Positions 19,137 to 47,172 of a stretch of DNA of 64,000 nucleotides are shown here, in pieces; the stretch's first letter is position 1; the number at the start of each line of letters is the position of its first letter. Where the stretch lies: assembly GCA_964247055.1 (NCBI GenBank), contig OZ176058.1:1-64000 (forward strand), given 5' to 3'. Below the pieces are notes generated by a model. It did no database searches, had not been told where the DNA came from, and worked only from the letters and a program-made list of their open reading frames with translations. Source of the DNA: Paragordius varius. Lineage: Eukaryota > Animalia > Nematomorpha. A program made the position numbers and the translations under genes.

Positions 19137-19174
19137 AGAGAGGGAACTCACGTGTACTCACGTGTTCCCTCTCT
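19137..19174. other. 11-bp perfect inverted repeat enclosing two tandem CACGTG E-box hexamers (3 identical copies: 19137, 36819, 44420)
   Basis: AGAGAGGGAAC-TCACGTGTACTCACGT-GTTCCCTCTCT, with CACGTG at 19149 and 19159. Confidence 0.75.
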
Positions 19175-20465: not shown

Positions 20466-20576
20466 GGGGTTTCGAGTTTGTGGGCTAGGGTTAGGGTAAG
20501 AGCTTGGAGTTGGTTCATTTTCTTAAAGAAGTCCGCAGGACTTCCTCGGGCTGCGAAGCAGGCCGAGACCCACGCA
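20466..20576 (+). mobile_element. H module copy 1: telomere-like G tract plus Helitron-type twin hairpins, lacking the terminal CTAG
   Basis: GGGGTTTCGAGTTTGTGGGCTAGGGTTAGGGTAAG..GAAGTCC-GCA-GGACTTC-CTCGGGCTGC-GAA-GCAGGCCGAG-ACCCAC. The hairpin 40-mer is nearly identical to the Helitron end at ~10178-10216. Confidence 0.7.
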
Positions 20577-20876
20577 TTTCAATTCAAATTTAATTTTTCT
20601 ATTAATCTTTTAATTATCTACTTAAAAATTACTTTCTAAAAGATGTTATATATTTAATATTTAAAGATTTCAATAACCTACGCCAAGATTTAATACTTAA
20701 TTTTATATTTTACAATAGTTACTCGAATTTCATTAAGGAAGATCAGCAGATATTTTTCTAGTAGCCTTAATAAGGTTGCATCCTGAATTAACTGAAACTT
20801 ATTTTTAATTAAATTTATTAAATAAATTAATATTTAACAAACATGACCACTTACGTTGAATCAAAATTTGTTTTAA

Positions 20877-21457
20877 CACTTGGATCAACACACTCATTAT
20901 AGTCCTTCGATTCAAATTGGGGTAGTTGGATACCCCAGGCCTGTTTAAAATCAAATACTTTAAAAAGTATGGAAGGAATCGAAATCATGGCAAAATTTTG
21001 CACTTATATAACATTAATAAACCGAAATATATAAAAAATTTTATTCAAAAATACTTGTAATTAATTATTTTGAGCTAATACTGAAAAGGTAAAAATTTAG
21101 TCAACGTGACATGTGTCAAATTGGAAAATTAAAAAATACTACAAAATAAACCGCTTTTTCTATTTCTATCGATGTTAGATGTAATTTATATAAAAAATAA
21201 GCTTTAGTTTTACCCTTAAAATTAAATGAGACGATATTTTGCAAAATTTTTGTAAAATAAAAATGACGTCGAAGTAGTTTGTGATTCAACTTTTTTTTCA
21301 AAACAAAATTTTATCAAGATATTTTGGCATATTTATATAATATTTATCAGGATAGAAGCATAAATTTTAATTGGGACCGTTTCCTTTAGTAGTTTTTTAA
21401 AAATTTTAATTTAAATTTAGTCTGGGGTATTTAGATACCCCAATTTAACTCGAAGTG
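20877..21457. mobile_element. piggyBac-type MITE (581 bp) with TTAA target-site duplication
   Basis: TTAA|CACTT ... AAGTG|TTAA, with ~35-bp subterminal inverted repeats containing GGGGTA..TACCCC. The paralogous block at 38461-38480 has the empty site with a single TTAA (aatttgttTTAAacattgtt). Confidence 0.85.
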
Positions 21458-21715
21458 TTAAACATTGTTAAAAACTATAAGTGAAATACTGGAATACTAT
21501 ATAAAGTACGTGTAAAACTTATAATAAGAAAATATCTGATCAGTTAAAAAAATATGCAAGGTTTAATTCTTTGAAAACGGGAACAGGTAAGGATGTGTTT
21601 AATATATTTTAACTCTATGCCCTGGTATAATTTTTACTTTTAACCAACATATACCTAGCATATACATAGAATTGTTTCAATTTATTGTGCCACACATGCA
21701 GGTGCAATACTTTAA

Positions 21716-21822
21716 GGTTTTCGAGTTTGTGGGCTAGGGTTAGGTGAGGGGGAGTTGGTTTATTATCTTAAAGAAGTGTTCAAGACTTCCTAGGGCTGCA
21801 CAGTAGGTCGAGACTCATGCAT
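21716..21822 (+). mobile_element. H module copy 2 (degenerate hairpins)
   Basis: GGTTTTCGAGTTTGTGGGCTAGGGTTAGG..GAAGTGTTCAAGACTTCCTAGGGCTGCACAGTAGGTCGAGACTCATGCAT; the flanks differ from copy 1. Confidence 0.65.
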
Positions 21823-24800
21823 ATTTAGAATAACCTTGCTGTTTTAAATGCAAAACAAATATTTATTTGATAGTTAAAATATTTAAATATATTCTACCAT
21901 TTTTTTGTTAAGTGTATCAAGTGTAAGGTAGCACATCATAGATGAAAGAAAAAATCTATATCTGAAATTCTGAGAAAATTTCATAAATTGTTGCATATGA
22001 ATAAGGTTAGTATAACAAAATAATAGTTTTGACTCTTGCTCTAATAATATTTGCAATTTTAACCCATAAAAATTGATTAACATTTAAACAATTTTATCCT
22101 TAAAAATTTATAATTAATATATATCCAAGCAAGTAATTTTTTAACAAAATATATGATAAAATTCAGAATTTCATATTCATACTACTATATTATATTAGCA
22201 CTTACAATATATAAATTGGATGTTAGTCAATAGCCAAGAATGTTTCTTCAAATTATTATGATGGTTTTACTGAATGTTTTACTAGGGCAAAATATATATA
22301 TTGTATATATATTCAGTGTTTTGTTAGATATCACAATTTTTAATTATAAAGAATATAACATCAACAGATTTTTATTCTAGAATTTATTTAAATGTCATTT
22401 AATTTTTAAAATATCGCTTATGCCAGATGGTACTCATAGATACATGAATTCAAATCCAAAAATTGTGGTTCGCTCATTTTAAGGAAAATTATGCTAAATT
22501 TTTTTGGAGCAGAAAGGTTTTTTATATTTTTTTTATTTTTTATAGATAATTGGTTATGAAAATGCCATATCAATTTAATATAATTTACGAAATTTAAATG
22601 TAATACGTTAAATTTCATACAAGATGTGGGACAAAACCAGGAAAAACTCGTGAGAAAACACGCCGATCAAATCATACATCAGCCACAGCAGTAAGCAACC
22701 ACATCAAGATGCACAAGTGATGAGGACATAACTATTAAAATGTTAAGTATTCAATAAATGCAAACCTATTTTCTTGTAAATTAGTATGCTTATTCAAAAT
22801 ATGACCACACATATACGTTTCGTATTTCTTGAAGCAAATAAAAAAATAATAAATTGTACTTGTGTCTTTTTTAATTATTTGAATAAAAGTACTTTTTGTA
22901 AAAGTTACAGTTCAACTTTATATAACCTAGTTTAAATATCAAACTTAATCCGACTCTTAGGCTATAAACATTTTTACAAACGTAATGAGCCCATTTAACA
23001 TATACAGTTAAACTCAAAACATAAGGCGAGAAATTACGATTATAACGTTACATTTATACGATCTTAGTAAGAATAAAAAAAGATTTAAAAAATTGTTGCC
23101 AATTCTAATTTTAGGTCCTTAATTTTACATAATCTATATGATATCTCTATTGAAAAAATTCTTATTTTTGAATAATTTATGCTATTTTAATTACAATTTT
23201 TAAGTCACTACTATTTTCTAGAACACAACCAGCTCGCTGCAAAAGCTATTGCTTAAATGTTTATTTTTAGCATTGCATATGAATTTATCGCCTTTCTATT
23301 TATCAATTATTTAAAATAAAATATAATGCTTTTCATTCTATTGACCTCTAAATAGATTTATTAACCACTTGGCTTAATGATTAATATTGGTGTGCCGTTG
23401 TTCACTAATTTTATATATAGGATATTTATTCAATAATCGGTTTCCATATTTTAATTGATTGGACAAAATTTCAACTTTGATATAGAACTTAGTTGTTTTT
23501 ATTTTAAAAGATATCGATTTAATTGAATGAATGGGCATCATATAAGGGAAATAAAAACCATTTTTTATTTATATTTTTTTTAATTTGAGCTTAAAATACC
23601 AGAGTTTTAGCTAAATTGGTCAGGTTTATTAATTTTATATTATTTCTGCTGTGTACATTAATGAGAAATAATAGATTACAAATAAACTGTTTTAAATCGT
23701 GGTTAATGCGATATTTAGCGAGGCTTTAGGATAAAAATTAATATAATCCGTCAAAACTTTTATGAAAACAATTACAGTTGTATAAAGACAAAAAAGTTTT
23801 TTATATAATTTTTTAAATCTCTTTAATCGTAAAAAATTCATATTACTGTATATTATATAAATGATTGTGTTACCAATTTTAATGCAATCGGATATATTTA
23901 TATAATATAAATCCAGATTAGAAATGTGTGGGTGTCTTTTAGAAAAAAACATTGTCTTTATGTTCATACGTTTTGTCTGTAATTTCAATTTATTCTATCT
24001 TCGGTCTTAGCTGACTATATTTATTTTAATATATAATAAGGCTGTTAATTATATTATAAAATATTTAGGCATGACTGAAATAAACTTAACAAGTCAATTT
24101 TGTGTTAGAGCAAATATACTGGCATTTAAAATATAATTTTGGATCTATGAAACATGACTAATGTTTGAAGTATATTATTAATATGTTTGATGTTAAAAAC
24201 ATTATTTTATCGTGTTAAATATTTATAAAACCACTATTTTCAGGATGCTATTGTAGAGTGAACGATTTTAAAAATACACAAATCCTAAATTATACAGACA
24301 GTACGTTATAATTTAATAGTTTATGATAACCACTAATAAACATTTTTCTGCAAATATAAGCTATTTTGTATGGTCGCATAATATTGGGACGACACTCAAT
24401 TACATTTTACAATTATCATTATATACGTTATAAATAAAAAATTACAAAATTATGGTTTTCTCTTTAGAATAATTATTTTCTGTTTATATTTATATTTTGT
24501 TTAAATTTCAATTTTTATTATAATAATCTGTAATGCGACTGTTTTATAGACCAATATCAGAGTTTTTATCTCTCCAGCTAATTTTAGCTAATTATAGGCC
24601 ATTTAATTAATGGCTAATTTACTCACGTATGACTTATGTGTTTGACGTAAGTATTTTACCGAAAACAAAACTATTCCAAATCCTCTCATAAATTAATAAG
24701 TTTTCAAATGCATAATTCAACTAAATTTTTATAAATTATTTATTCCACATATTAAATAATAGTAAGTAAAAAAATTAAAAGGACAAAATGTAAAAATATA

Positions 24801-25292
24801 AAGACAAAAATTTTTTTAAAAGACAATCATACTATTTAAATTTTGATATAGTTCAGTATAACTCAGTGTTTTACATGGCTAGTGAAATAAAGATATATAT
24901 TACTTACACAATTAATTCTACATTTTACAATCGTAACTAAATAGCTTATATGAGAAAAATGAAGGTTTTAAGAAGTGTGGTTGTCTTTTAGATAAAAATA
25001 TTTGTCTTTAAATTTTTACGTTTTGTCCGTATAATTTCAATTTTTATAAGTAAAAAGATCAATATTCCAAGTTCATGTTGATTACCAGTAATTATTGTTT
25101 TATATTAAATTATCCCAAAATTGATAAAATTTTTCCTAAAAGGCATTTTCATTTCATTTGACAATGGATTGAATCCATGGCATGTATTCTTTAACTGAGG
25201 TGAAGATAGTTTTAGCCAATTTACTTTATTACAGATTTATATTGAGAAGAATTTATTAAATTGCTTATCGTTAATGCATATCTATATAATTG

Positions 25293-26153
25293 CAGTAAAA
25301 ACTGAGATTATACGGACAAACTTGGAAATATAAAGACAAATATTTTTTTCAAAAAGAAAACCATACTTTTTTAATCTTGATTTTTTAAAATATAACTTAT
25401 CGTTTTAAACTACAAAGTTTAATATAGAAATGTCAATTGGTAACACAATCAATTATTTTTACGATTTCATGTTTTTCAAAGGATAAATTAAGGTTTAAAA
25501 AAGTTTGGTTGTCTTTTGAAAAAAAAATTTGATTTTATATTTTAAAGTTTTGTCAGTATAAATTTAATTTATACTGTAATTAACTCTATTATATAAAAAT
25601 CATAGCGCTTTTAAAGGTTTTCTTATATCAAATGTTGTGTAATAGTTAGTAGGATTGCTTTTGCAATAATTGTCCTTAATTAAACAAACGTTCGCTTAAT
25701 TGCGTTAGTTAATTATAAAACAAACCTTGAAATAATTTTATTTTTTTGGCTTTTTAAGAGGTAATCCCCTATGCAACATGAAAGAATTAACATTAAGGTC
25801 AGGTTTCAAGTGTTTTATTTAAATAGATATCCTTTAGATGTAAATACTGTTACATCTACAGTTTTTTCGCAAATATTACAGTAAGAATTGAATTATACGG
25901 ACAAAACGTAATAGAACAAATATTGTTTTTAAATGACAACCATACTTTTTAAATGTTGATAAATTTAAATTAACTTGTTTTTTATTTCCAAAATAAAATA
26001 TAGAGATGTATATTGGTAAATCAAGTCTATATATTAAAATCGAAATTAAATAACTTTCTGAAAATTAAGGTTTAAAAAAGTATGGTTATCTTTTAGAAAT
26101 AAATATTTGTCTTCATATTTTTACGTTTTTTCCGTATAATTTCGTTTTTACTG
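25293..26153. mobile_element. Two adjacent family-1 MITEs (25293-25576 and 25879-26153)
   Basis: Each has CAGTAA..TTATACGGACAAA at the left end and its reverse complement ending ACTG|TA. Confidence 0.8.
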
Positions 26154-26725
26154 TATTTATAAATGCCCGAAGCCCGTCGTTAATTTTAAGCTAAAAATGC
26201 GGATTACAAAGTAATCTGGAGACTCCTGCAAAGTTACTTTACAAACAGAAAATATTTAAATTATTCCGAAAACCTAATACTAAAATACTATTTTTCAAAA
26301 ACAACCACAATTTTTTAAACCATGACATTTTAGATATAAATTAATAAATTACAATTGTAAAATATGTTACTGTTTTAGTTATCAATATACATTTCCATAC
26401 TTTGCAGTTAAAACAATGAGTTTTATTAAAAACGTCAAATTTAAAATGAAAGAGGTCTTTTCAATAAAATATGTGTCCTTATATTTTTAAACTTTATAAA
26501 AATTTGTAAACGAATAAAAAGTAAGAAAGCACAAACACATTTATTTTTCGATATTTGGTATATATATAAATTCCAAAAATGTTGAATTTTGGCATTTTTG
26601 AAATTAAAAAATGTTGCACACATTGTAAGAAATAATTTTATATATAAATAAATATAATTTGCTATTAAAAGCTTTATGTTAGTAAAACTTATTATGAATG
26701 CGTTTAAAAAGGTTTTGAAAAAATA

Positions 26726-26905
26726 CAGTATGAGTAAGTATATCTTGCTAGAAAGTTATTAATTATTACCAAATAGTTAATACAACAAAGGGCCTATTAT
26801 TGGCGTATAGTTATTTTTCCACTTTTTACTATTATGAGCTAATAATATCGCCCTTTGTTGTATATATTTGGCAATAAACTTTATAGGAATATCTTACTCA
26901 TACTG
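26726..26905. mobile_element. 180-bp fold-back MITE, family 4 (Tc1/mariner-like)
   Basis: TA|CAGTATGAGTAAG ... CTTACTCATACTG|TA plus an internal inverted pair (tacaacaaaggg / ccctttgttgta). Confidence 0.8.
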
Positions 26906-27588
26906 TATAATACTGATCTGAAAAATTTGTTAAATTTTTCAACATAATATATTTGTTATAGCGAAATGCCAGATAAAAACAACGGAACCGTGGGCAGTAT
27001 AAATATTAATTATAAATTACAAAAGAAAATGAAAAAAAAATCCTTAAAATAAAATTTAAAGTCCAAATTATTATGCAAATAACTGTCAGCTCAAAAACTA
27101 AACGTCAATTTGGCGAAATTTAAGGCACTTTCGTGTTTATGTCTAAGAAGCGTTTTTTGTTTCGGATATAGATATCTTTAATTTGATATGATTCTTCTTT
27201 GACGATTTCAAAACTTTTTTAGTTTAGTTAATAGGTCATAAAAAGATTTTAACTTTCCAAATATTTACGCCTAGATTAAAAAAAGCAAATGTTGAAGTTT
27301 AAACTATTATATCCATTTTGAAATGAAAAAATAAAAGTTTTTTTAGTTTAAAGTTGACAGTTTATAAAATAATTTTCATATATATACGCCTAAATTTAAA
27401 AAAAAGCCAATGTTGAAGTTAACTATTTTTATCCATTTTGAAATGTAAAATTTTCAAAGTTTTTTTAGTTTTAGAGATGACAGTGTATAAAATTTGTTAC
27501 AATCCATTAATTTACGCCAAAAAAAACAAATTTTGAACTTTAAACTAATCCATTTTCAAATGTAAAAATAAAAAAATATAAAATGTGT

Positions 27589-27712
27589 TTAGAAAGAAAT
27601 GATTGAATATCTTCTGTGAGAAGAAGAGTTTTGCGGTTGAGGTAAAACAGCCGAAACATAATGGCCAGTAATTCTTGGTTGATAATTATGGTGAACAGTT
27701 TGATATTGAATA
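27589..27712 (-). repeat. Partial tandem duplicate of the terminal exon of the minus-strand paramyosin-like gene, within a degenerate tandem-repeat zone (~27240-27960)
   Basis: Reads IQYQTVHHNYQPRITGHYVSAVLPQPQNSSSHRRYSIISF* versus IQYQTVHHHSYNQPRISGHYVSAILPQPQNSSRRYSIISF* in the exon at 27831-28025. Confidence 0.75.
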
Positions 27713-27830
27713 TAAAATTTGTTACGATATCCATATATTTGAGCCAAAATATAAACAAATTATATAAAAAAAGCAAATTTTGAAGTTTAAACTATTATAA
27801 TCTATTTTGAAATAAAAAAAAGTAATCAGT

Positions 27831-30800
27831 TTAAAAAGAAATGATTGAATATCTTCTAGAAGAGTTTTGCGGTTGAGGTAAAATAGCCGAAACGTAATGT
27901 CCAGAAATTCTTGGTTGATTATAGCTATGATGGTGAACAGTTTGATATTGAATTCCAGATGAACCACCTTCAATAATACTTCCTCTACGACGTCTGTTTA
28001 CAGACTCTTCGAAATTATAGTAATCCTAATATATAGAGTAAAATTTGAAAATGTTTAGTAAGATTAAAGTGTTATTTAAGTACTTTTTAAAATAATTTGA
28101 AATTTAAAGTATTATTCAAGTACTTTTTAAAATATAACTTGTTTAAAGTGAAAATAATACAATAAAAATTGAAATTATACTATGGAAGGACAAAACGTAA
28201 AAATATAAAGACAAATATTTTTTTCATAACTGTACAAAAATTTAGGTTTATGGACTGACTACTCAATTATATATCAATTTATTACTTTGGAAAAATCAGG
28301 GTTTAAAATGTACACCTGTTTTTAAATAATTAATATATAAAAACAGTAATATTTGAAGTTTAAAAGTATTATTGAAGTACTTTTTGATATATATATTTCA
28401 ATTTCTCACAAGTAATACAATAAAAGTTGAATTATACTATGGAAGCAAAACGTAAAAATATAAAGACAAATATTTTTTTCTAAGACATACTATTTAAATC
28501 TATATGTTTTTAACTATAACTCATTATTGCCATCAGAAATTGAAATGTATACCGGTAAAACAATCAATTATATATTATACATTTGTAGTTATATAATTCA
28601 TAAAAGAAGAAAGGTTTAAAAAGTATACTTGTCTTTAAAAAAAATTTGTCTTTTTTTAGCCCGTATAATTTTAATTACTGTAAAATCTGAAAATTTCAAA
28701 TATAATTCAAGTACTTTTTGAAATATAACTGGTTAAAATGAAAATAATACAATAAAAATTGAAATTATACCAAATCGTAAAAATATACAGACAAATATGT
28801 TTTTCAAAAAGACAACTAACTATCTCTTTTGAATCTTGGTTCTTTAAATATATCTGATTGTTTTTAACTACAAAGTATAATATAGAAATTAATCAATTAT
28901 GTATTTTACGATTGTAACTAAATGTTTTTATAGGTTAAATTAAGGTTAAAAAGTATGGTTCTCTTTTGAAAAAGATATTTGTCATTATATTTTTACATTT
29001 TGTCCATATAATTTTAATTTTTACTGTATTCTTCAAGTACTTTAAAATTATAACTAGTTTAAAGTAGAAATAATAATTAGATGTTTGGCACCAGACTCAA
29101 TTATATATCAATTATATCACAAATAATATAGAGAATAAATCATTTTTTAAAATTGGCTGTTTTCAAAATATTGTTTAAATCTAATCGAAAAATGTTACTA
29201 ACATAGAGTAAAAATTGGAATTATATGAATTTTAATAAATTTGTAAAAACACGCAAAAATAGACAATAATTTTACACATTGATTTTTTTTAAAAAATGTG
29301 CTTTTTTTGTTTTTATAATTTTAATTTTTATAATGTATATTTGCCTAATCAGCTATATTTTAAGATATAAATATTTAATAGGTATTTTGAATACAAGCGT
29401 CTGAAAAATGAAGTACAGTAAAAACTGAAATTATACGGACAAAATGTAAAAATATTAAGACAAATATTTTTTTCTGAAAGATAGCCATATTTTATTATCG
29501 TAAATTTTCTCATATAACATATAATTATAATTGTATAATATATAATGGTTTTTTACCAATATACATATCAATTTCCTACTTTGCGATTTTTAACAATTAT
29601 TTGCATTAAAAAGTATGGCTGTCTTTTTTGAAAAAAATATTTGTCTTAATATTTTCAAGTTTTGTCCGTATATTTTCAATTTTTACTGTAAATTCAAAAT
29701 AAAACATACCATTTAAACCTCAAAACTCTCGAACATTAAAAATTCACCCTTAAACATTAAAATTTACCTTCGTTTTTTCACCCTTATAAATGGCGTTTTT
29801 GAAAATCAAAAATAAAAAGAAATTACAGTAAAAACTCAAATTATGGACAAAACGTAAAATTATAAAGACAAATAATTTTTTCTAAAAGACAACAATACTT
29901 TCTAAATCTTGATTATTTTCAATATAAGTGATTATTTATTCCACAAAGTATAATATAGAGATGTATATTGGTAACACAATCAAATATATATTTTATTATT
30001 GTAAATAATCATTTAATATGAGAAAAATTTAAATTTAGAAAAGTATGGTTGTTTATTATAAAAAAAATTTGTCTTTATATTTTTACGTTTTGTCCGTATA
30101 ATTTCAGTTACTGTATATTTTACGATATATGTTATATATACCTTTAAATATTTTTACTCTATATCGCTTATTATAAAAATTCAAATATATCCAATTAATT
30201 ACAGTAAAAATTCAAATTATACAGACAAAACTTGAAATATTTTTTTAAAAAGACTACTATACTTTTTTAATCTTGATTTTTTTTTAATTAACTCATTGTT
30301 TTAAACTACAAAGTATAATATAGTCAATTTGTAACTTAATTAATTGTGTATTTTACATTTGTTAAGTTTTAAAAAATTTTAGTGATCTTTTGAAATGTCA
30401 ATCTATATATTTTTACATTTTGTCCGTATAATTTCAGTTTTAATTTATATACCCAATCAATAATTTAACAAAAATTATTCGATTTCAACTTTTGCTGTTG
30501 ATATGATTAATATTTTTCGAATACTTTTATTTTTTAATTATTTCAAGTATAATATTATTTAATTAAGATCTAAAATTTGACTCATTGGTTTTTTTCAATA
30601 AAGATTTGAAATAAACCAAATTATATTATTGTTAATTTGACCCGAACCGGAAATTATGAATAGGATAGCAGAATTGACAAGTTATTTTTTAATATTACAG
30701 TAAAAATTGAAATTATACGGACATAATGTTAAAAATATAAAGACAAATAATTTTTTCCAAAAGACAACCATATTTTTTGAATCTTGATTTTTTTAAATAT

Positions 30801-36336: not shown

Positions 36337-36341
36337 ACTTA

Positions 36342-36564
36342 CAGTCATGTATCCTTTATTTTATCAAAAATTTATTTTTTTTCATTAAATGGGTATAATT
36401 TGGTAAAGAATGGAAAAAACAAGAGCTTTGTGGTAATTCTAATACTTTATAATGAATATGATATTGTAAATACCAAAAAGCTCTTGTTTTTTCATTCTTT
36501 ACCAAATATTTATATCCCCATTTAACGAAAAAATAACTTTGATAAAATAAAGGATACATGACTG
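36342..36564. mobile_element. 223-bp fold-back MITE, family 5 (Tc1/mariner-like), just upstream of the putative MSE start
   Basis: TA|CAGTCATGTATCCTTTATTTTATCAAA ... TTTGATAAAATAAAGGATACATGACTG|TA, with ~88-bp inverted arms and TA flanks. Confidence 0.88.
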
Positions 36565-38147
36565 TAGTTTTCTTAAATACTATATAAATTAAAACTATAC
36601 AGACAAGGATTAGCTATGATTATTTCCCGATTCTTGATTTCATTTCAATTCTATAACATTATATGAAAAAATATACTTTGTAAGCAAAATTAATTCTCAG
36701 TCCATGTAATTGCCGGAACAAGATAGACGGAAGAAGGCACGCATGCATATTGCATTGGAAAAATTTTAAAAATAAAAAAATTAAAAATGAATTTTGCCTA
36801 CAAATTCATTGTATATATAGAGAGGGAACTCACGTGTACTCACGTGTTCCCTCTCTTTCTTGTTCTGTCCAATTAAAAAAGTGCCCATATTCGAGAAATT
36901 TCGTTACTTTTGTTTGTTTCGCCCAAAAAAACACATTTGAAACATACACAGTCTTTCTTGTTCTTATGCATATAAAAATTATAAATATGTAATATGATTA
37001 TTACTAAATATGGTATTTTGTTTGTTTGTTATATAAATTCCTTAAATTCCTTAAATAAAAATAAATTCCTTTGTATGATGCAATAAAAATAAAAATAAAT
37101 TCCTTATGTGCACAAGTCTTAAAAAAATGTATGTGTTTAATATTATGTCAAATATCCCAAATAAATAATTTGAAATATAAATTTGAAAAAAATTTTAATT
37201 AAAACTGCCATCTTATTATTTGAGTATATTTGAAAATTAGATGTTTACATGAAATATTTATTCTATGTTTTAATCTATTTAATTAATCAATAAAAATATA
37301 TTATACCTATCAAAAGCTGTAAATAATAGTTTAGGATTAGTTAAAAAGCAAATTAATTCCTTTTAATTGATTGATAAAGTTCAAATCTGTATTTTTAGTT
37401 TTGAAAGTTAAAATTTAAAGGTTTTTTGAATTTTACTTTAAAATATAAAAAGTGAAAATGTATTTTTATTTAATATAATTATGTTATAAATCAATCTCAC
37501 CTTTATTCAAAAATGTTAAGAAAAAATTTATAACATTGTCAACAAACCAAAATTAATTTGTTAGCCAAAAATTATTAAAGTAAATTATTTTTTTAATTAA
37601 GAAAAAATGTTTTAAGAATTGAATAGTAGAAAGTTAGTTTTTGATTTAATAAGGTTGCCTTTGTAATTAATATATCTGAAATCATTAACCCATTCTGATA
37701 ATTATATAATCTTTTGATTATTATTGAAATTATTGGTTCGCAAACTAGTAAATTATTTCATATTTAAATAAGTGAAAAATAAAATTTAAAGTATTAGCCA
37801 ATCTTATTCCTATGATAGTATTTTTGAAAAGCTAATGGGAAATTTAAATTATATAGAATCTAGACAAAAACATTGATTAAGTTCCTAAATAAGTTATTAT
37901 TTAATTTTATGGTAACAATTGAGGTCAACACATAAATCCTACATTTTAAACAATCGCTTTTGGCAACTCATAAACGCTAAAATTTAATTAAAAAAAGACA
38001 GATCTTTTATTAATTTAAATTTAAAAAGCTGGATAAACAATTTAATGTAGATAATTATCTCAATTAATCTTCTTATCTATTGGTAATATCGAATATAAAT
38101 ATATGATTATTATACAAAATTGTCAGATTATTATTAAAATACACCTA

Positions 38148-38254
38148 GGGGTTTCGAGTTTGTGGGCTAGGGTTAGGATAAGAGGTTGGAGTTGGTTCAT
38201 TTTCTTAAAGAAGTCCGCAGGACTTCCTCGGGCTGGCAGGCCGAGACCCACACA
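38148..38254 (+). mobile_element. H module copy 3 (4-bp deletion removes the second loop)
   Basis: Same sequence and flanks as 20466 except GGGCTG-GCAGG in place of GGGCTGCGAAGCAGG, plus a few substitutions. Confidence 0.7.
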
Positions 38255-38773
38255 TTTCAATTCAAATTTAATTTTTCTATTTATCTTTTAATTATCTACT
38301 TAAAAATATAAAAGATGTTATATATTTAATATTTAAGATGAGTAGATATTTTTCTAGTAGCCTTAATAAGGTTGCATCCTGAATTATCTGAAACTTATTT
38401 TTAATTAAATTTATTAAATAAATTAATATTTAACAAACATGACCACTTACGTTAAATCAAAATTTGTTTTAAACATTGTTAAAAATAGGTTAACTTAATA
38501 CTATATGTAAAATACTGGAATACTATATAAAGTACGTGTAAAACTTATAATAAGAAAATATCTGATCAGTTTAAAAAATATGAGCAAGGTTTAATTTAAT
38601 TTGTGAAAAGTGTTAGAATATAGTCATTTTGAAAACGAGAACAGGTAAGGATGTGTTTTAAATAATTTAACTCTATGCCCTGGTATAATTTTTACTTTTA
38701 ACCAACATATACCTAGCATATACATAGAATTGTTTCAATGTATTGTGCCACACATGCAGGTGCAATACTTTAA

Positions 38774-38839
38774 GGTTTTCGAGTTTGTGGGCTAGGGTTA
38801 GGGTGAGGGATTGGAGTTGGTTCACTTTCTTAAAGAAGT
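38774..38839 (+). mobile_element. H module copy 4, truncated inside the first hairpin
   Basis: GGTTTTCGAGTTTGTGGGCTAGGGTTAGGGTGAGGGATTGGAGTTGG..GAAGT, then unrelated sequence. Confidence 0.65.
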
Positions 38840-39462
38840 TTCATGATTAAATAGTTTTGTAATAATATTGCATTATATTATATATGATTTACTACTAAAC
38901 CGTATATTTAATATTATACTTATGTGATAATGTAAGATTACCATCAATTAGACTTACGTATGATATGTTGAGAGTTTTTATTATTTGAATAATATATATA
39001 AACCTATGCTCGTTTCTGTAAACAAGAACATTGTATTAAAAATTATTATAACTCTCAAACATTACATTCTACACATATATTGTTACCCAATTTTTAATAT
39101 TTTTCCTAATTTAGACAAATGTTTTTTATATTTTGTCGAATTTGTTGAAATTAATTTAAAAAATATTAGAAGCATTCAGCAATTGGATATTTAATTGATT
39201 TTGTTTTCTTAATTTTGATGCTTAAATTTAATTAAAACCTATTTAATATTATTTTCTACAGAGAAATCGCTATTTTTTATTATAATATAATATATTTATA
39301 AAATAGCATGTTTATTTCAAACAAGACCACTTAAGTTTTAAAAATATAAAGTTGATTAAGTTTCAAAATGATTTGATCCCAAATTGCAACAATCTTTAAT
39401 TTTATAAGGAGAGAATTGGATGAAGAATTTTATTATATTTTTTAATGGGGGTAAGTTCTTTC

Positions 39463-39570
39463 TTTCGAGTTTAAAGGCTAGGGTTAGTGCGAGGGATTGG
39501 AGTTGGTTTATTATCTTAAACAAGTGTTCAGGACTTCCTAGGGCTGCAGAGTAGGTCGAGACTCATGCAT
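39463..39570 (+). mobile_element. H module copy 5 (copy-2 type)
   Basis: TTTCGAGTTTAAAGGCTAGGGTTAG..GGACTTCCTAGGGCTGCAGAGTAGGTCGAGACTCATGCAT; the downstream flank matches that of 21716. Confidence 0.65.
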
Positions 39571-42500
39571 ATTTAGATTAATCTTGCTGTTTTAAATGCA
39601 AAACAAAGTATTTATTAGAAAGTTAAAATATTTAAATATATTCTACCATTTTAAATTTTTGTTAAGTGTATCAAGTGTAAGGTAGCACATATCATAAATG
39701 AAAGAAAAAATCTTTATCTGAAATTCTGAGAAAATTCCATAAATTGTTGCATATGGATAAGGTTATAACAAAATAATAGTTTTGACTCTAGCTCTAATAA
39801 TATATGCAATTTTAACCCATAAAAATTGATTAACATTTAAACAATTTTATCCTTTAAAATTTATAATTAATATACAAATGGATATATAAATTGGATGTTA
39901 GTCAATAGCCAAGAATGTTTCTTCAAATTATTATGATGGTTTTACGAATGTTTTACTAGGCAAAATATATATATTGTATATATATATTCAGTGTTTTGTT
40001 ACATATCACAGTTTTTAATTATAAAGAATATAACATCAACAGATTTTTATTCTAGAATTTATTTAAATGTCATTTAATTCTTAATATCTTAAAATTATAT
40101 CGCTTATGCCAGATGGTACTCATAGATACATGAATTCAAATCCAAAAATTGTGGTTCGCTCATTTTAAGGAAAATTATGCTAAATTTTTTTGGAGCAGAA
40201 AGGTTTTTTTATATTTTTTTTATTTTTTATAGATAATTGGTTTTAAAAATGCCATATCAATTTGATATAAATATTTACGAAATTTAAATGTAATACGTTA
40301 AATTTCATACAAGATGTGGTACAAAACCAGGAAAAACTCGTGAGAAAACACGCCGATCAAATCATACATCAGCCACAACAGTAAGCAAACACATCAAGAA
40401 GCCCAAGTGATGAGGACATAACTATTAAATGTTAAAGTATTCAATAAATTCATTTGCATGCAAACCTATTTTCTTGTAAATTAGTATGCTTATTCAAAAA
40501 ATGACCACACACATACACGTTTCGTATTTCTTCAAGCAAATAAAAAATAATAAATTGTACTTGTGTCTTTTTTAATTATTTGAATAAAAGTACTTTTTGT
40601 AAAAGTTACAGTTCAACTTTATATAACCTAGTTTAAATATCAAACTTAATCCGACTCTTAGGCTATAAACATTTTTACAAACGTAATGAGCCCATTAAAC
40701 ATATACAGTAAAACTCAAAACATAAGCCGAGAAATGAGGATTATAACGTTACACTTATACGATCTTAGTAAGAATAGAAATAGATTTTAAAAAAATGTTA
40801 CCAACTCTAATTTTAGGTCATATATATTTAAATAATCTAAATGATCTAACCTATTGAAAAAATCTTAATTTTAATAAATTTATACTCATCTACCTATTTT
40901 CTAGGACTCAGCTTGTTACAAAAGCTATTGCCTATATGTTTATTTTAAGCATCGCATATGAAGTAAATTTATCGCCTTTCTTAAACTATTTATCAATCAT
41001 TAAAAATAAAATGAAATGCTTTTCATTCTATTTAGGATCCCTCTAAATAGATTCATTAACCACTTGGCTTAAGGATTAATTTTGGTGTCCCGTTGTTTAC
41101 TAATTTTATATATAGAGAATATTTGTTCAATAAAGTTATTCCAGATTTTAATAGATTGGACAAACGTGGAACATAGCTGGTTTTTTAAAAAGGTTTTCCA
41201 CTAATGTTTGCCTTTATAAATGAATACGCCATATGAGGAAAATTAAGACATTTTATACTAGTTATATATATATATATTATATAATTTTTGGAACCATATA
41301 ATTGGCTTTTCTGTCATAACATATATTTGGGAAACAAAAGGCTTATTGGGGTTTGGTATAAACCGTTGGCGGGATATTTACAGCGTTTTTAGGAAAAAAT
41401 ATTTTCATTTCATTAAAACATAAATGAATACAGTTGCCTTAGGTTAATATTAATATAAAGAGTAATAAGATATCATGATTGTGTATTTCAGTAATCCTAA
41501 CTATAAATGGAATGTTAAATGTTTATTTACTTTATTTAAGTTTAAAATTAAAAAGTTTAACATTAATCAAAATAACAGAATAAAAATTGTAATTATACCG
41601 ACAAAAAAAGTAAGAATATAAAGACAAAAATGTTGTTTCAAAAGAAAAATATACTTTTTAGACCTAATTTATCCTATAAAAATTAATCAATTACAATCGT
41701 AATCATATATAACTGATTGTGTTACCAATTATATCTATTATATACTTTGAAGTTTATAACAATCGGTTATTTTATAAAAATCCAGATGTCAAAAGAATTG
41801 TGTTTTAATATGAAATAGTAGTCTTAATAAAAGTTTTGTCCGTAAAAATTCAAATTTTAGTGTAGCTTTATTCTATCTTTGGTCATAGCTGACCTTGATA
41901 CCATGTATAATAATATTGTCTTGCAGATTACTTTTTCTTTAAGGTTCCGCCTATGGAATAATGTATAAAATGGGTGTCCTGATTAATTCTTTATATTTAG
42001 CCAAATGCGAATATTAAAAAAATTAAGGGTGATAGTTTGTATTAGTGCTGTATTCACTAAAATTAATAATTTAATTTTGTATCGATTTGACCGTTGTTGG
42101 CTAACGCTTTATTATCTGTATGTTTAATTATTTAAACACAGAAACGTAGGGGTGAAAAATACATGAAAAACTTATGTGGATACTCCTTTCAGTTATCTAT
42201 TCAGATTGAATTCATAAATACACTATTAATAAATATAAACAGACAACGTTAGAGGTAAAAAACAAATTATTTCCCTAAAAGATAACGATAATTTTTAATA
42301 CCATTCCAAATTTTACAATTTTTATTATATAGTTTATGATGAAAATATTAAGGTAAAAAATGTTTAATTTACATTTTAAAAGAAACATTAATTTTAATTA
42401 TTAATTTTTGTATATATGAATTATAATATGTTGTAATGCGATATAAACCAATATCCGAGTTTCTATCTTTCCAGCTAATTTCAATTAAAAAAATATTCAA

Positions 42501-45500
42501 TTTCTTTGATATACATTTTTGTATAATTGAGTTATTTTTGATCTTGTGTCATTTGTTGTGATTCTTTATTTTAATTTGTTTCGATTGTTGGATAGTTTTG
42601 TGCGTAAGTATTTTCAAAATCTAAAATATATTAATAGATAAAAATTAATAAATACAGTATTATTTGATTTATAAAGTGCAAAACTTTTTTTGCTCGTTTA
42701 ACCAATTAGTGGTTTTTAAAACAAATTTTTGTGGTTTAGTTAAATTAAGCTTTTTTAAGTGGCAAACTTAAAACCTCAAACAATTAATATATAAAATTTA
42801 CAATATCTATCATATTAAGCTCTACAATCATTAACTCTAGCCCACACAGTCAAAATCATTTAACCTTGCGTTGTTAATTAAACAATTGACATATTCTTGT
42901 GGAAATTTTCAATACGGTAATTATAAAATTTAGGGGTTTTTAGAGGATATTATAGAACTTGGATTTGTTATGATCTAGTGTTTTTTGGAAAACTGTAATT
43001 GTTAAAAAGTTTTATTTTTTTAAATGTTTTGTTAAAATGAATTTATAGCGTATTTTAATAGAAATTTAACCTTATTTTTTAAAATTTTTAGCGTATTTTT
43101 TAGAATTTTTAGGGTATTTTTTAGAATTTTTACCGTATTTTTTAGATTTTTTAGCGTATTTTAATGAGAATTTTTAGCGTATATTTTAGAATTTTTAGCG
43201 TATTTTATTGGAAATTTTCCTTTATTTTTCTAGTTTATTTACATATTTTATTCACCCTTTAACTAATTCACAATGTTTAATAAATTTTTAGAAGAAAAAA
43301 ATGCGGAGAATATAAATATATAGAGTCCGAAATTTACAAAATTTTATTCGAATTAGATTGAAAAGGCCACAAATGTAACGTTAATATAACGAAAATTTAT
43401 TTTTAGCCATATTTTTTAGAAATAGGATAGTAAAATCGATGTTCAAGTTGTAAACATGATAGATAATTAATTTAACATCTTTCTTGAAATTATTTGTTAA
43501 ATTCTTTAAATCAATTAAGATTAGTATACTTTGTTTTAATTTAAGATTATATTTCAATCCTAAATTAACAGGAAAAGACCCATACGACTAAAGCAAAAAA
43601 TAAAATCACATGTTTTTAACTTTTTTAAACTTGGTTTCCTGGTCCCAAATCAAAAAAATAATTCACATTTTTAGAGATTAAAAATAGTAATTCCACCCAA
43701 CTATTATATATATATAATATAAACAAGTGCAAATTTATTTAAGGATTTCTCGAGATTTCTTCAAACATCGTACGAAATAGTAACATATAATGAAAACTAA
43801 ATTTATTGCAACAATTTTTAAAGATAAAATTTAAAAGTAGAGAGAAAAATATCTATTGGATTAAATTAAGAAAAAAAATTTATAAACTAACATTAGTTCT
43901 TTTAGTGGTATTAAATGACTCCATTTACCGGAAATATTTTCTAGCGTTTTTCGAATTAAAACCAGCATGCATTTTAATCAAAACTGTTAACTTAAAACAA
44001 CATGAAAAATGTAAATCTTACGAAAATTATTATCCAGTCCAAATCGTAAGGGCAAATGCTTTCATTGATTTCATTTAAGGTCCCAATGCAATTCACAAAG
44101 CATCCATTGTTGTTTTAAATATTCTATGAATTAAATGCAAAAAAATTTACCTTAATAAATGTTTTGAGATATTAATTACATTGTTGTTTGATTTGCAGTA
44201 AGGATTAGCTATGATTATTTCCCGATTCTTGATTTTTCATTTCAATTCTAAAACATTATATGAAAAAATATACTTTGTAAGCAAAATTAATTCTCAGTCC
44301 ATGTAATTGTAGCCGGAACAAGAGAGACGGAAGAAGGCACGCACGCATATTGCATTGGAAAAATTTGGAAAAATAAAAAAATTAAAAATGAATTTTGCCT
44401 ACAAATTCATTGTATATATAGAGAGGGAACTCACGTGTACTCACGTGTTCCCTCTCTTTCTTGTTCTGTCCAATTAAAAACGTGTGCATATTCGAGAAAT
44501 TTCGTTCCTTTTGTTTGTTTCGCCCAAAAAAACACATTTGAAAGATACACAGTCTTTCTTGTTCTTATGCATATAAAAATTATAAATACGTAATATGATT
44601 ATTACTAAATATGGTAAAAATTTATATATTTTGTTTGTTTGTTATATAAATTCCTTAAATTCCTTAGTATGATGAAATAAAAATAAAAATAAATTCCTTT
44701 GTATGATGCAATAAAAATAAAAATAAATTCCTTATGTGCACAAGTCTTAAAAAAATGTGTGTGTATTATATTATGTATTAAATATCCCAAATAAATAATT
44801 TGAAATTTAAACTTCAAATTAAAATATTATAAAACTGCCATCTTATTATTCAAGTATATTTGAAAATTAGATGTTTACATGAAATATTTATTCTATGTTT
44901 TAATCTATTTAATTTATCAATAAAAATATATTATACCTATCAAAAGCTGTAAATAATAGTTTAGGATTAGTTAAGAAGCAAATTAATTCCTTTTAGTTGA
45001 TTGATAAAGTTCAAATCTCTATTTTTAGTTTTGAAAGTTAAAATTTAAAGGTTTTTGAATTTTACTTTAAATAAAAAGTCAAAATGTATTTTTATTTAAC
45101 TTAATTATGTTATAAATCAATCTCACCTTTATTCAAAATGTTAAGAAAAAATTTATAACATTGTCAACAAACCAAAATTAATTTGTTAGCCAAAAATTAT
45201 TAAAGTAAATTATTTTTTTAATTAAGAAAAAATGTTTTAAGAATTGAATAAGATTTGTAGAAAGTTGGTTTTTGATTTAATAAGGTTGCCTTTGTAATTA
45301 ATATATCTGAAATCATTAACCCATTCTGATAATTATATAATCTTTTGATTATTATTGAAATTATTGGTTCGCAAACTAGTAAATTATTTCATATTTAAAT
45401 AAGTGAAAAATAAAATTTAAAGTATTAGCCAATCTTATTCCTATGATAGTATTTTTGAAAAGCTAATGGGAAATTCAAATTATATAGAATCTAGACAAAA

Positions 45501-45778
45501 ACATTGATTAAGTTCCTAAACAATAAGTTATTATTTAATTTTATGGTAACAATTGAGGTCAACACATAAATCCTACATTTTAAACAATCGCTTTTGGCAA
45601 CTCATAAACGCTAAAATTTAACTAAAAAAAGACAGATCTTTTATTAATTAAATTAAAAAAGCTGGATAAACAATTTAATGTAGATAATTATCTCAATTAA
45701 TCTTCTCTCTATTGGTAATATCGAATATAAATATTTGATTATTATACAAAATTGTCAGATTATTATTAAAATACACCT

Positions 45779-45889
45779 GGGGTTTCGAGTTTGTGGGCTA
45801 GGGTTAGGGTAAGAGCTTGGAGTTGGTTCATTTTCTTAAAGAAGTCCGCAGGACTTCCTCGGGCTGCGAAGCAGGCCGAGACCCACGCA
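45779..45889 (+). mobile_element. H module copy 6 (essentially identical to copy 1)
   Basis: Same sequence and flanks as 20466-20576. Confidence 0.7.
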
Positions 45890-46412
45890 TTTCAATTCAA
45901 ATTTAATTTTTCTATTAATCTTTTAATTATCTACTTAAAAATTACTTACTAAAAGATGTTATATATTTAATATTTAAAGATTTCAATAACCTAAGCCAAG
46001 ATTTAATACTTAATTTTATATTTTACAATAGTTACCCGAATTTCATTAAGGAAGATCAGTAGATATTTTTCTAGTAGCCTTAATAAGGTTGCATCCTGAA
46101 TTATTTGAAACTTATTTTTAATTAAATTTATTAAAAATTAATATTTACTCACAAACATGACTACTTACGTTTTAGGAATTAAAATTTTTTTGAACATTGT
46201 TAAAATAGGTTAACTTAAAACAGGTATATATGAAATACTGGAATTATATATAAAGTGTATACTTATAATAAGAAAATATCTGATCAATTAATTTTATCGG
46301 TTATATATGTGCAAGGCTTTATTTTCATTTGTGATCTAATGATAAAAAGTGTTACAATATAGTCATTTTGAAAACAAGAATAGGTATTTATGTGTTTTAA
46401 ATGATATATCAA

Positions 46413-46495
46413 GGGGTTTCGAATTTGTGGGCTAGGGTTAGGGTGAGGGATTGGAGTTGGTTCATTTTCTTTAAGAAGTCCGCAGGACTTCCTCG
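46413..46495 (+). mobile_element. H module copy 7, truncated at the second hairpin and fused to the SLC5 exon-17 copy
   Basis: ..GAAGTCCGCAGGACTTCCTCG|TAAGATGTATTCGCTATC.. Confidence 0.75.
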
Positions 46496-47172
46496 TAAGA
46501 TGTATTCGCTATCTTATCTCCTGGTTACACCGATTGGCTTCATACTTTGTGCAGTAATAGCTGTTGTTGTAAGTCTCCTAACAAGTAATTCGAAATATCA
46601 AATACTGTATTAATCGCATATACGATTATAAACCCTAATTTTTAATATAAACTAACCTTGGAAATGCAAAAAAGTATTCCTATTTTACACAATTTCATAT
46701 TTTGCACTAAACGATGAATTGCAATTAAAAAATGGCTATATCAAAAAATTATTTGTCGTTATGTTTTTATTGTCTGTATAATAATATTTTACTCTAAAAA
46801 AATGTATGATTTATAGTATACCATTTACAATTCAAATTCACCCTTTAACAATTCAAATTTACCCCAAAAATAAATTATGTGTTTTCGGGATTATATAACT
46901 CATTATTAATATGAAATTACTTCTTATGGCATAGTTTATTATTTTTTTAATATTATTTTAAGTTTAAACAAAATTTGCTTTTTTAGATATATATAAATGT
47001 ATAAGTAATTATTGAGCTTAGAAAACCTATATTTTTTTAAGGGTGAATTTAACTGTAAATATTATAAATATATATATTATAGATTATTTCTTGTATAGAT
47101 GGTACAAAGAATGCTAACCTGAATTTTGATGAGACTTCGCTTCTTCATCCGTGGATTGCTCGGAAACATTAA
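46496..47172 (+). pseudogene. Duplicated 3' fragment of the SLC5 gene (exon 17 at 46496-46584, intron, exon 18 at 47099-47172); possibly part of a chimeric ORF starting at 46401
   Basis: Both exon lengths (89 and 74 nt), the splice sites and the stop (TAG changed to TAA) are kept, with a few substitutions (T>I, D>N, LP>SL). The intron still carries the family-3 MITE. Confidence 0.88.

What the first reader, a model, noticed from the sequence alone, without database searches (positions are those of the whole stretch)
20466..46495. Seven copies of a ~110-bp module fusing a telomere-like tract to Helitron terminator hairpins, found at the rearrangement junctions
Seen: the module at 20466, 21716, 38148, 38774, 39463, 45779 and 46413 begins GGTTTCGAGTTTGTGGGCTAGGGTTAGGG, i.e. 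degenerate copies of this chromosome's own TTAGGG repeat. It ends in two hairpins nearly identical over ~40 nt to the 3' end of the intact Helitron at ~10178-10216. Unlike that Helitron, the module ends ACCCACGCAT instead of ATTCGCTAG, so the terminal CTAG is missing, and GTGGG/CCCAC can close a helix around the whole module. Three block junctions of the duplication lie in or at the module: copy 4 is cut in hairpin 1, copy 5 restarts the series after ~620 bp of unrelated DNA, and copy 7 is cut in hairpin 2. Established: Helitrons move by rolling-circle replication, and bypass of the 3' terminator is a proposed route to capturing flanking host DNA. Inference: this is a terminator-defective, telomere-seeded Helitron derivative that drives subtelomeric amplification and exon capture. 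The telomeric seed might target it to chromosome ends or recruit telomere-binding proteins. I do not recognise this combination from described elements, but I could not search for it.
Basis: partly seen in the sequence, partly recalled or inferred. Interest (0 to 1): 0.8.

Follow-up and report, generated by a model that had tools for sequence, protein, structure and literature searches.

The report
Orphan Helitron end with telomere-like tract
A ~120-bp cassette that joins a short telomere-like G-rich tract to the two terminator hairpins of a rolling-circle transposon (Helitron) is real, but it looks like a stranded transposon end copied along with large duplicated blocks, not an engine of chromosome-end rearrangement; its one odd feature is that it stays far better conserved than the DNA around it.

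Summary
The sequence-level observation holds. Seven copies of the ~115-120-bp module lie at the stated coordinates. Each has a telomere-like G-tract followed by two hairpins that match 38 of 42 nt of the 3' end of a real Helitron at 9644-10225. All lack the terminal CTAG.

Most of the interpretation does not hold.
- The module is a family of at least 112 copies confined to about 14 clusters on seven contigs. These are regions of large tandem or inverted duplication, mostly 0.15-2.5 Mb from contig ends. Only this window's cluster lies beside a telomere.
- No Helitron left end was found near any copy, and no autonomous element ends in the module.
- Two of the three "junctions" are local events: a 46-bp hairpin deletion in c4, and unequal crossover between tandem modules in c2/c5. 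The "unrelated" 620 bp is an ordinary spacer, also present on contig C2.
- Only c7|46496 is a true heterologous junction, and it is the only one of its kind in the genome.
- No copy has an extended telomere tract.

One thing is unexplained: modules are 96-99% identical between paralogous blocks whose flanks are only 47-90% identical.

Other first readers of this scan had already noted the module elsewhere in this genome.

Verdict: a Helitron-derived orphan right-end cassette, a new variant of a known kind, of moderate-to-low interest.

The parts
1..3690 (.). Terminal telomere array (CCCTAA)n with variant units (CCCTTAA, CCCTCTAA, CCCGAA) near the junction
9644..10225 (+). Canonical 582-bp non-autonomous Helitron: 5' TCTATATATT..., twin hairpins at 10177-10216, 3' ...ATTCGCTAG, inserted between A and T
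   Evidence: Full-length copies at 86-89% identity on 10 contigs. An empty paralogous site lies at the C7 right subtelomere. The 5' 411 nt are shared with RepHel locus L039.
17429..18008 (+). 21-bp minisatellite that opens each duplicated unit. A second copy lies at 43039-43250, and the array is 4.8 kb long at the C2 paralog.
20466..20580 (+). Module c1: complete, with both hairpins, ending ACCCACGCATTTC; the fourth G-tract is mutated
21716..21825 (+). Module c2: old and decayed (84% to consensus). Its 5' half resembles c4 and its 3' half resembles c5, so it is the product of unequal crossover that removed spacer B'.
38148..38258 (+). Module c3: a paralog of c1 with a 4-nt deletion in the loop of hairpin 2
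38774..38839 (+). Module c4: the 5' part is 96% to consensus with an intact G4 motif. Both hairpins and the tail were lost in a ~46-bp deletion (GAAGT|TTCATGA).
38840..39462 (+). Spacer B' between c4 and c5. It is not foreign DNA: it is 91% identical to the spacer after module u3 at C2:15025059-15025669.
39463..39573 (+). Module c5: an old decayed copy (82%) with eroded hairpin stems
45779..45893 (+). Module c6: identical to c1 over 112 nt
46413..46495 (+). Module c7: 96% to consensus with an intact G4. It is cut after CTCG of hairpin 2 and joined with 1-nt microhomology to X3.
46496..48204 (+). X3: an 83% copy of 15479-17264 (putative transporter exon plus downstream DNA). Homology starts at the base after an ...TATTAG acceptor in X0.
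19126..20465 (+). Block A-up, the flank shared by c1, c3 and c6. Its copies lie at 36605-38147 and 44200-45778, with paralogs at C2:15.023 Mb and at C8:2.009 and 2.038 Mb.
20871..21462 (+). Young ~590-bp element of a very high-copy family, inserted in the c1-c2 spacer of unit I only

Best explanation
The module is a stranded right-terminal sequence (RTS) cassette derived from this genome's Helitron family.

What it consists of:
- About eight degenerate telomere-type units: TTTAAGGG, TTTCGAG, TTTGTGGG, CTAGGG, TTAGGG, TGAGGG, ATTGGAG, TTGG.
- These run directly into the family's two terminator hairpins.
- The last bases read ACGC-ATTTC instead of ACGC-TAG.

How it behaves (inferred):
- It has no left end in cis, so it is not mobile on its own.
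- Its copies multiply passively. It lies in multi-module tandem series, with spacers of 0.4-1.25 kb, inside several-kb units. These units are amplified as large tandem and inverted segmental duplications in about 14 mostly distal clusters.

What happened in the window:
- One unit, ordered 21-bp minisatellite, Y, A, module, spacer, module(s), C, was triplicated.
- Unequal crossover between tandem modules, and slippage deletions across the hairpins, then produced c2, c3 and c4.
- One break at the base of hairpin 2 was joined to a copy of DNA from 15479 onward, giving c7.

Shown versus inferred:
- Shown: the derivation from a Helitron end, the genomic distribution, the absence of a nearby left end, and the nature of the c2, c4 and c5 events.
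- Inferred: immobility and passive spread.
- Open: why intact modules stay 96-99% identical. Ectopic gene conversion limited to the module, or selection on the cassette, are the candidates.
For: Helitron derivation:
- The 30-nt hairpin pattern has 497 exact hits. Most are the dispersed canonical type.
- The canonical element is a bona fide Helitron with an empty site.
- A RepHel-associated end reads ...GAGATTCACGCTAG.
- The module shares GG(A/T)TCATTTT upstream and ACGC downstream of the hairpins.

Restricted, clustered distribution:
- The 3' 20-mer has 66 hits and the 5' 18-mer has 112 hits, all in the same clusters on C1, C2, C4, C5, C7, C8 and C9.
- Copies often alternate + and - every 9-15 kb with a period of about 24 kb.
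- L029 and L030 are 100% identical inverted arms of at least 3.1 kb, with the module internal to the arm.

No partner left end:
- No LTS hit lies near any module.
- Sequences just 3' of modules do not resemble the LTS.
- RepHel loci lie outside all clusters.
- The LTS is essential for transposition and the RTS is dispensable in Helraiser (PMC4778049).

Local mechanisms:
- The spacer matches its C2 counterpart.
- c2 is a chimaera of c4 and c5.
- At least 8 of about 35 distinct copies carry deletions anchored in the hairpins. Two of these lie between GCA/GCA repeats.
- Breakpoints fall inside stems or loops, not at the expected cleavage site.

No link to telomeres:
-.

Larger repeat context:
- Module loci share further blocks (Q, P, S, R, T) in a fixed order and orientation.
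Against: - Modules are 96-99% identical where the 400-bp flanks of the same paralogs are 47-90% identical and full of indels. Passive hitch-hiking alone does not predict this.
- Only the canonical LTS was searched for. A different, unrecognised left end further upstream cannot be excluded.
- The 3' boundary is sharp and the 5' boundary fades gradually, as expected of a working Helitron terminus.
- Eleven of 14 clusters with a known distance lie within 1.25 Mb of a contig end. Some bias towards distal chromosome regions therefore exists.
The edges of the ~24-kb arrays were not examined.
Confidence: 0.6

Rival explanations
1. The module is the defective terminator of a still-active Helitron derivative. 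Its read-through amplifies subtelomeric DNA and captures exons, and the telomere-like seed targets it to chromosome ends.
For: - CTAG is missing.
- c7 is joined to a copy of exon-bearing DNA exactly at an exon start.
- Modules sit in amplified regions with a distal bias.
- RTS bypass does cause capture in Helraiser (PMC4778049).
Against: - No LTS lies near any copy.
- No empty sites and no dispersed insertions were found.
- Only one heterologous hairpin-2 junction exists in the genome.
- No new terminator lies downstream of X3.
- X0 is not preceded by a module.
- Only 1 of about 14 clusters is near a telomere, both orientations occur, and no copy has an extended telomere tract.
- Two of the three junctions are local deletion or crossover events.
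Confidence: 0.1
2. The module is the working right end of a separate non-autonomous Helitron lineage. Its left end differs from the canonical one and lies more than 1.5 kb upstream, for example before the minisatellite. Under this model the multi-module series are serial insertions next to older ends.
For: - The 3' boundary is sharp at GCATTTC and the 5' boundary fades.
- The termini are better conserved than the body, as is usual in Helitron families.
- The base before the conserved core is usually A and the base after the end is often T.
- A younger copy usually lies upstream of an older one in the same orientation.
- Other Helitrons here have an LTS, satellite, RTS layout (earlier notes s1-257470 and s1-323120; C6 array).
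Against: - The copies are not dispersed, unlike the canonical family.
- All paralogs of block A carry the module at the same nucleotide, and none is empty.
- Homology continues downstream of the module between paralogs.
- No conserved head precedes the minisatellite in the window or in C2.
- There is no CTRR terminus.
Confidence: 0.15
3. The cassette is actively maintained, which is compatible with an orphan-RTS origin. One route is selection for a host or transposon function of the G-quadruplex-plus-hairpin structure. The other is homogenisation by ectopic gene conversion, possibly triggered by RepHel nicking of orphan ends.
For: - The module is 96-99% identical against 47-90% for the flanks in eight paralog pairs.
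- c1 and c6 show 0 differences in 112 nt where flank divergence would predict about 5.
- Diagnostic variants are shared in a mosaic pattern across contigs.
- The structure is predicted to be stable.
- The consensus carries a perfect (G3N3)3G3 motif.
Against: - Many copies have decayed or been deleted (c2, c5, u4, L029_s and the truncated copies), so not every copy is constrained.
- No covariation is available.
- No RNA family matches.
- No neighbouring genes were found.
- Uniform conservation with sharp edges fits conversion better than function.
Confidence: 0.25

Closest known systems
Canonical Helitron (Helitron1) right terminal sequence, as defined for Helraiser/Helibat (PMC4778049)
   Same: Subterminal GC-rich hairpins a few nucleotides from the end. 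The 40-nt hairpin segment is nearly identical to the resident family's RTS. It sits on the same strand relative to an A...T context.
   Different: There is no CTRR/CTAG terminus, no 5'-TC left end in cis, no empty sites and no dispersed copies. A ~60-nt telomere-like G-tract replaces the usual upstream sequence.
Helitron-derived tandem arrays and subtelomeric expansions (Hydractinia and Nematostella, PMC11934779; Helitron 'many heads, one tail' satellites noted elsewhere in this genome)
   Same: Fragments of Helitron termini are amplified locally, with a bias towards distal chromosome regions.
   Different: Here the repeated piece is the right end, not the left. The spacers between copies are heterogeneous. 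Most of the copy number comes from 10-30-kb segmental duplications rather than from a homogeneous satellite.
Telomere-inserting Helitrons of Paramecium (PMC13085455)
   Same: Helitron ends are physically associated with telomere-type repeats. In this window the modules also point away from the chromosome end.
   Different: In Paramecium the repeats are true telomere tracts flanking whole elements at chromosome ends, with an absolute orientation bias. Here the tract is 1.5 perfect units inside the cassette, copies are mostly internal and in both orientations, and no complete element is attached.
Short interstitial telomeric sequences and hairpin or palindrome fragile sites
   Same: A short degenerate TTAGGG-like run sits at internal sites. 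Deletions are anchored in short inverted repeats and show 1-3-nt microhomology.
   Different: The tract is part of a fixed, copied cassette rather than independent insertions made by telomerase-mediated repair.

Membership tests
Helitron (Helitron1) transposon - complete element | 5'-TC left terminal sequence | tested here: not met
   The canonical LTS (W 9644-) gives no hit in W 10.3-64 kb, in the 30 module loci or in 30 kb of C2. The 100 nt after each module do not resemble the LTS. A divergent LTS is not excluded.
Helitron (Helitron1) transposon - complete element | 3' CTRR terminus | tested here: not met
   The module ends ...GAGACCCACGCATTTC. The canonical copies end CGCTAG or ACGCTAG.
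Helitron (Helitron1) transposon - complete element | GC-rich hairpin about 10 nt upstream of the 3' end | tested here: met
   There are two hairpins, with 7-bp and 10-bp stems and 3-nt loops. They match the resident RTS at 38/42 and are predicted in the DNA fold.
Helitron (Helitron1) transposon - complete element | Insertion between A and T without target duplication, shown by empty sites | tested here: inconclusive
   For the module, all six paralogs of block A are filled at the same nucleotide and no empty site was seen. The flanking bases are mostly A...T. As a control, the canonical element has an empty site on C7.
Helitron (Helitron1) transposon - complete element | RepHel protein in the genome to act in trans | tested here: met
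   PF14214 has 16 matches at about 10 loci, mostly with stops. A 259-aa ORF is classified as Helitron_like_N. None lies in a module cluster.
Telomere-associated / telomere-targeted element | Copies concentrated at chromosome ends in a fixed orientation and flanked by real telomere tracts | tested here: not met
   Only the window cluster is within 150 kb of a known contig end. Both orientations occur. Only one copy in the genome has two perfect TTAGGG units, and none has more.
Structured non-coding RNA gene | Match to a described RNA family | tested here: not met
   Rfam gives no match at gathering thresholds on the window or at E<=1 on the module.

The most novel reading that the evidence does not exclude
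The cassette is not debris but a maintained element. It would be an orphan Helitron terminator fused to a telomere-type G-quadruplex, kept nearly invariant across old paralogs because RepHel (or a host factor) still acts on it. Nicking or fork stalling at the cassette would then both homogenise the copies by ectopic conversion and seed the large tandem and inverted amplicons in which all copies reside.
Probability: 0.12. Interest if true: 0.7.

Novelty: new variant of a known kind. Interest (0 to 1): 0.33.

Why it matters
If the ordinary reading is right, this is a worked example of how a stranded Helitron end behaves. It is carried along by segmental duplication, reshuffled by unequal crossover between copies, and eroded by hairpin-mediated deletions. 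It is also a caution against reading junctions at repeats as evidence that the repeat drives rearrangement.

The part worth following is the conserved island. A 112-bp G4-plus-twin-hairpin cassette stays 96-99% identical while its surroundings drift to 47-90%. It occurs only inside about 1.2 Mb of amplified regions. If that reflects continued recognition by the transposase, or a host function, it would link orphan rolling-circle termini to concerted evolution or to amplicon formation.

Tried and rejected
1. A complete mini-Helitron within the 120 bp. Rejected: the core is preceded by T/A-rich, weakly conserved sequence, there is no TC start, and it bears no similarity to the LTS.
2. Tail-to-head concatemers. 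Rejected: spacers after modules do not resemble the LTS, and adjacent spacers differ from each other.
3. A piggyBac-like TTAA element suggested by ...TTTAA|GGG...TTC|TTTTTAA. Rejected: the downstream TTAA is absent in many contexts and there are no terminal inverted repeats.
4. Terminal inverted repeats of a ~10-kb DNA transposon, suggested by the alternating +/- copies. Rejected: L029 and L030 are identical over at least 3.1 kb in inverted orientation, so the modules lie inside the arms of large palindromic duplications.
5. A Pol III or small-RNA gene. No Rfam hit was found.
6. Helitron body homology upstream of L008-type modules. The match proved to be a palindromic MITE.
7. Coding genes next to modules. 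No Pfam hits were found. The loci just outside the clusters hold LRR genes and an LTR-retrotransposon integrase, which tell us nothing about the module.
8. Fetching canonical copies and array edges.
9. Two searches gave little. One search used a terminal H that excluded the consensus. One search was swamped by a high-copy ~590-bp element.
10. Identifying the organism. The Atlas search only confirmed RepHel. The host is an AT-rich animal and is not human.


Full report
**Setting.** The window is the left end of contig C9 (5.07 Mb) of a 110.6-Mb, 44-contig assembly. Bases 1-3690 are a (CCCTAA)n telomere, and the rest is about 24% G+C. Notes from other readers (paramyosin, SLC5, snRNA) indicate an animal genome. 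It is not human.

**Observation.**
- The 29-mer that opens the module matches six times with 3 or fewer mismatches, against 0 expected. A seventh, more diverged copy lies at 39463.
- The genome-wide consensus runs in this order: (AC)TTTAAGGGTTTCGAGTTTGTGGGCTAGGGTTAGGGTGAGGGATTGGAGTTGGTTCATTTTCTTAAA, then hairpin 1 (GAAGTCC-GCA-GGACTTC), then hairpin 2 (CTCGGGCTGC-GAA-GCAGGCCGAG), then ACCCACGCATTTC.
- GGGTTAGGG occurs in the 60-kb body of the window only inside modules (expected 0.009).
- The 5' half reads as about eight degenerate telomere-type units. In the consensus it forms a (G3N3)3G3 motif.
- The hairpins match 10176-10217 at 38 of 42 positions.
- Folded as DNA, the module gives both hairpins and the GTGGG/CCCAC closing helix. 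The canonical end gives the two hairpins only.

**The reference Helitron.**
- A genome search places the left boundary of the repeated unit at 9641-9644.
- The element is 9644-10225, 582 bp long. It reads 5' TCTATATATT... and 3' ...CGCTAG, and it sits between A and T.
- Full-length copies at 86-89% identity lie on ten contigs. The 30-nt hairpin pattern has 497 exact hits, mostly of this type and dispersed.
- The paralogous subtelomere at the right end of C7 has the empty site ...GCCTA|TTTATTTAT....
- Its first 411 nt recur upstream of a Rep domain in L039.
- A Rep-associated end reads ...GAGATTCACGCTAG, and RepHel fragments exist at about ten loci.
- The resident family is therefore a textbook Helitron1. 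The module shares its hairpins, a GG(A/T)TCATTTT stretch upstream and ACGC downstream, but it ends ATTTC instead of TAG.

**Genome-wide distribution of the module.**
- The 3' 20-mer has 66 exact hits and the 5' 18-mer has 112.
- All hits fall in the same clusters:
  - C1 14.61-14.67 Mb
  - C2 14.69 and 15.008-15.026 Mb
  - C4 0.72-0.96 and 1.22-1.35 Mb
  - C5 13.22 Mb
  - C7 8.52-8.73 Mb
  - C8 0.67, 2.0, 5.29-5.52, 5.94 and 6.05-6.20 Mb
  - C9 the window, 2.5 Mb and 3.47-3.57 Mb
- Within clusters, copies commonly alternate + and - every 9-15 kb with a period of about 24 kb.
- L029 and L030 are 100% identical inverted arms of at least 3.1 kb, with the module inside the arm.
- Using the contig lengths, 11 of 14 clusters with a known distance lie within 1.25 Mb of a contig end. 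Only the window's cluster is within 150 kb.
- No RepHel locus lies in a cluster.
- Only one copy in the genome has two perfect TTAGGG units before the hairpins, and none has more.

**Is it a transposon end in use?**
- Between loci with different flanks, homology is limited to about 120-135 bp. It ends sharply at GCATTTC and fades on the 5' side through a weak AGGTnnAAnnACTTTAA consensus. That asymmetry is what a Helitron right end would show.
- Against this, the canonical left end is absent from 54 kb of the window, from +-1.5 kb around 30 copies and from 30 kb of C2.
- Sequences following modules do not resemble it.
- All six paralogs of block A carry the module at the same nucleotide, and none is empty.
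- Module loci share further non-coding blocks (Q, P, S, R, T) in a fixed order and orientation. They therefore look like diverged copies of a larger unit rather than independent insertions.
- In Helraiser the left end is essential and the right end dispensable (PMC4778049). A right end alone should not move.

**The window's architecture.**
- The repeating unit is ordered: 21-bp minisatellite, Y, A-up, module, A-down, module(s), C-head, tail.
- Three units are present. Unit I spans 17429-23467. Unit II spans 36605-41360 and is truncated on its 5' side. Unit III spans 43039-46495.
- The paralog at C2:15.020-15.027 Mb has the same order, with four tandem modules u1-u4 spaced 768, 647 and 723 bp apart.
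- The 620 bp between c4 and c5 is 91% identical to the spacer that follows the complete module u3 on C2.
- c4 differs from u3 only by loss of about 46 bp, from GAAGT to TTCATGA.
- c2 has the 5' half of c4 and the 3' half of c5, which marks an unequal crossover that removed that spacer in unit I.
- c3 has a 4-nt deletion in a hairpin loop.

**Hairpin-anchored deletions elsewhere.**
- L045 holds three deleted copies, and the inverted C2 pair holds two.
- In all, at least 8 of about 35 distinct copies carry deletions with a breakpoint in a hairpin. Two of them lie between GCA/GCA repeats.
- The breakpoints lie in stems or loops, not at the position where RepHel would cut. This points to secondary-structure slippage rather than to transposase action.

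**The c7 junction.**
- c7 is cut after CTCG of hairpin 2. It is joined, with a single shared G, to an 83% copy (46496-48204) of 15479-17264.
- In X0 that point follows ...TATTAG, which looks like an exon start.
- This is a true heterologous junction. A pattern search shows it is the only one of its kind in the genome: the other four hits are duplicates of the L045 deletion, and two more are point variants.
- At least five other block edges in the window are not at modules.
- No hairpin or terminator follows X3, and X0 is not preceded by a module. The layout is therefore not what terminator bypass predicts.

**The unexplained part.**
- In eight paralog pairs the 112-bp core is 96.4-99.1% identical. 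The adjacent 400 bp on each side are 47-90% identical with many indels.
- The A-block paralog on C8 is 73% identical overall yet contains both exact diagnostic words.
- c1 and c6 have no differences, where about five would be expected.
- Other copies in the same units (c2, c5, u4 and the downstream copies in L014 and L029) have decayed at the flank rate.
- Variants such as GGGCTTCGAG or CATTTCC are shared across contigs in a mosaic pattern.
- The likely explanations are ectopic gene conversion restricted to the only shared segment, selection on the cassette, or descent from long-lived active masters. I cannot separate these with the sequence I could reach.
- No RNA family and no coding sequence explains the conservation.

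**Comparison with known systems.**
- Associations between Helitrons and telomeres or subtelomeres are already described. Paramecium has Helitrons that insert into telomere repeats (PMC13085455). Hydractinia and Nematostella have Helitron-derived subtelomeric arrays (PMC11934779).
- This cassette differs from both. The telomere-like tract is internal and short, the copies are right ends only, and they are mostly far from telomeres.

**Verdict.**
- The sequence features are real.
- The module is best read as an orphan Helitron right-end cassette, amplified passively and reshaped by recombination and hairpin slippage.
- The claims that it drives subtelomeric amplification, captures exons by bypass or is aimed at telomeres are not supported.
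- The conserved-island behaviour keeps a modest residual interest.

**Limits.**
- Only the canonical left end was tested.
- Counts rest on exact words and so miss diverged copies.

Noticed in passing
window 20871-21462: A ~590-bp element with GGGGTA...TACCCC-type inverted ends. It is inserted only in unit I. The genome search for the unit was swamped by this element (3556 first-look candidates for the whole query), and dozens of listed copies are 94-95% identical, so it is a very young, very abundant family.
   Followed up: partly
window 3806-9662 vs C7:9546261-9552598 (L049, L050): The first ~6 kb inside the telomere is 79-85% identical, in inverted orientation, to the last ~9 kb of contig C7. 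This is a shared subtelomere. The C7 copy preserves the empty site of the 582-bp Helitron.
   Followed up: partly
window 46495/46496 and 15478/15479: The duplicated segment X3 starts at the base after a ...TATTAG acceptor-like site of X0, that is, at an apparent exon start of a transporter-like gene. This could be coincidence, or a hint of an RNA-templated or splice-site-associated event. Whether introns are retained in X3 was not examined.
   Followed up: partly
G000 C4:1.22-1.35 Mb, C7:8.52-8.73 Mb, C8:5.29-5.52 and 6.05-6.20 Mb: Arrays 100-230 kb long with a period of about 24 kb, each unit containing inverted segments 9-15 kb apart. Together the module-bearing clusters span about 1.2 Mb. 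What these units contain is unknown.
   Followed up: no
window 17429-18008; L041-L042 (C2:15016000-15020800): A 21-bp minisatellite (TATTTTTTAGAATTTTTAGCG) is 0.6 kb long here, 0.2 kb at 43039 and 4.8 kb at the C2 paralog. On C2 an 18-bp minisatellite precedes it.
   Followed up: partly
G000 C6:6440241-6444027: A tandem series repeats the first ~400 nt of the 582-bp Helitron every ~1055 bp and then ends in one full element. This is the 'many heads, one tail' layout that others noted in this genome.
   Followed up: no
window 13728-13995, 25293-25581, 28745-29029 and dozens more; 9450-9616: A ~280-bp repeat family and a ~190-bp palindromic MITE saturate the window. They create spurious similarity between unrelated loci.
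   Followed up: partly
window 3560-3690: The innermost telomere units are variants (CCCTTAA, CCCTCTAA, CCCGAA). TTAAGGG is also the first unit of the module's G-tract.
   Followed up: no
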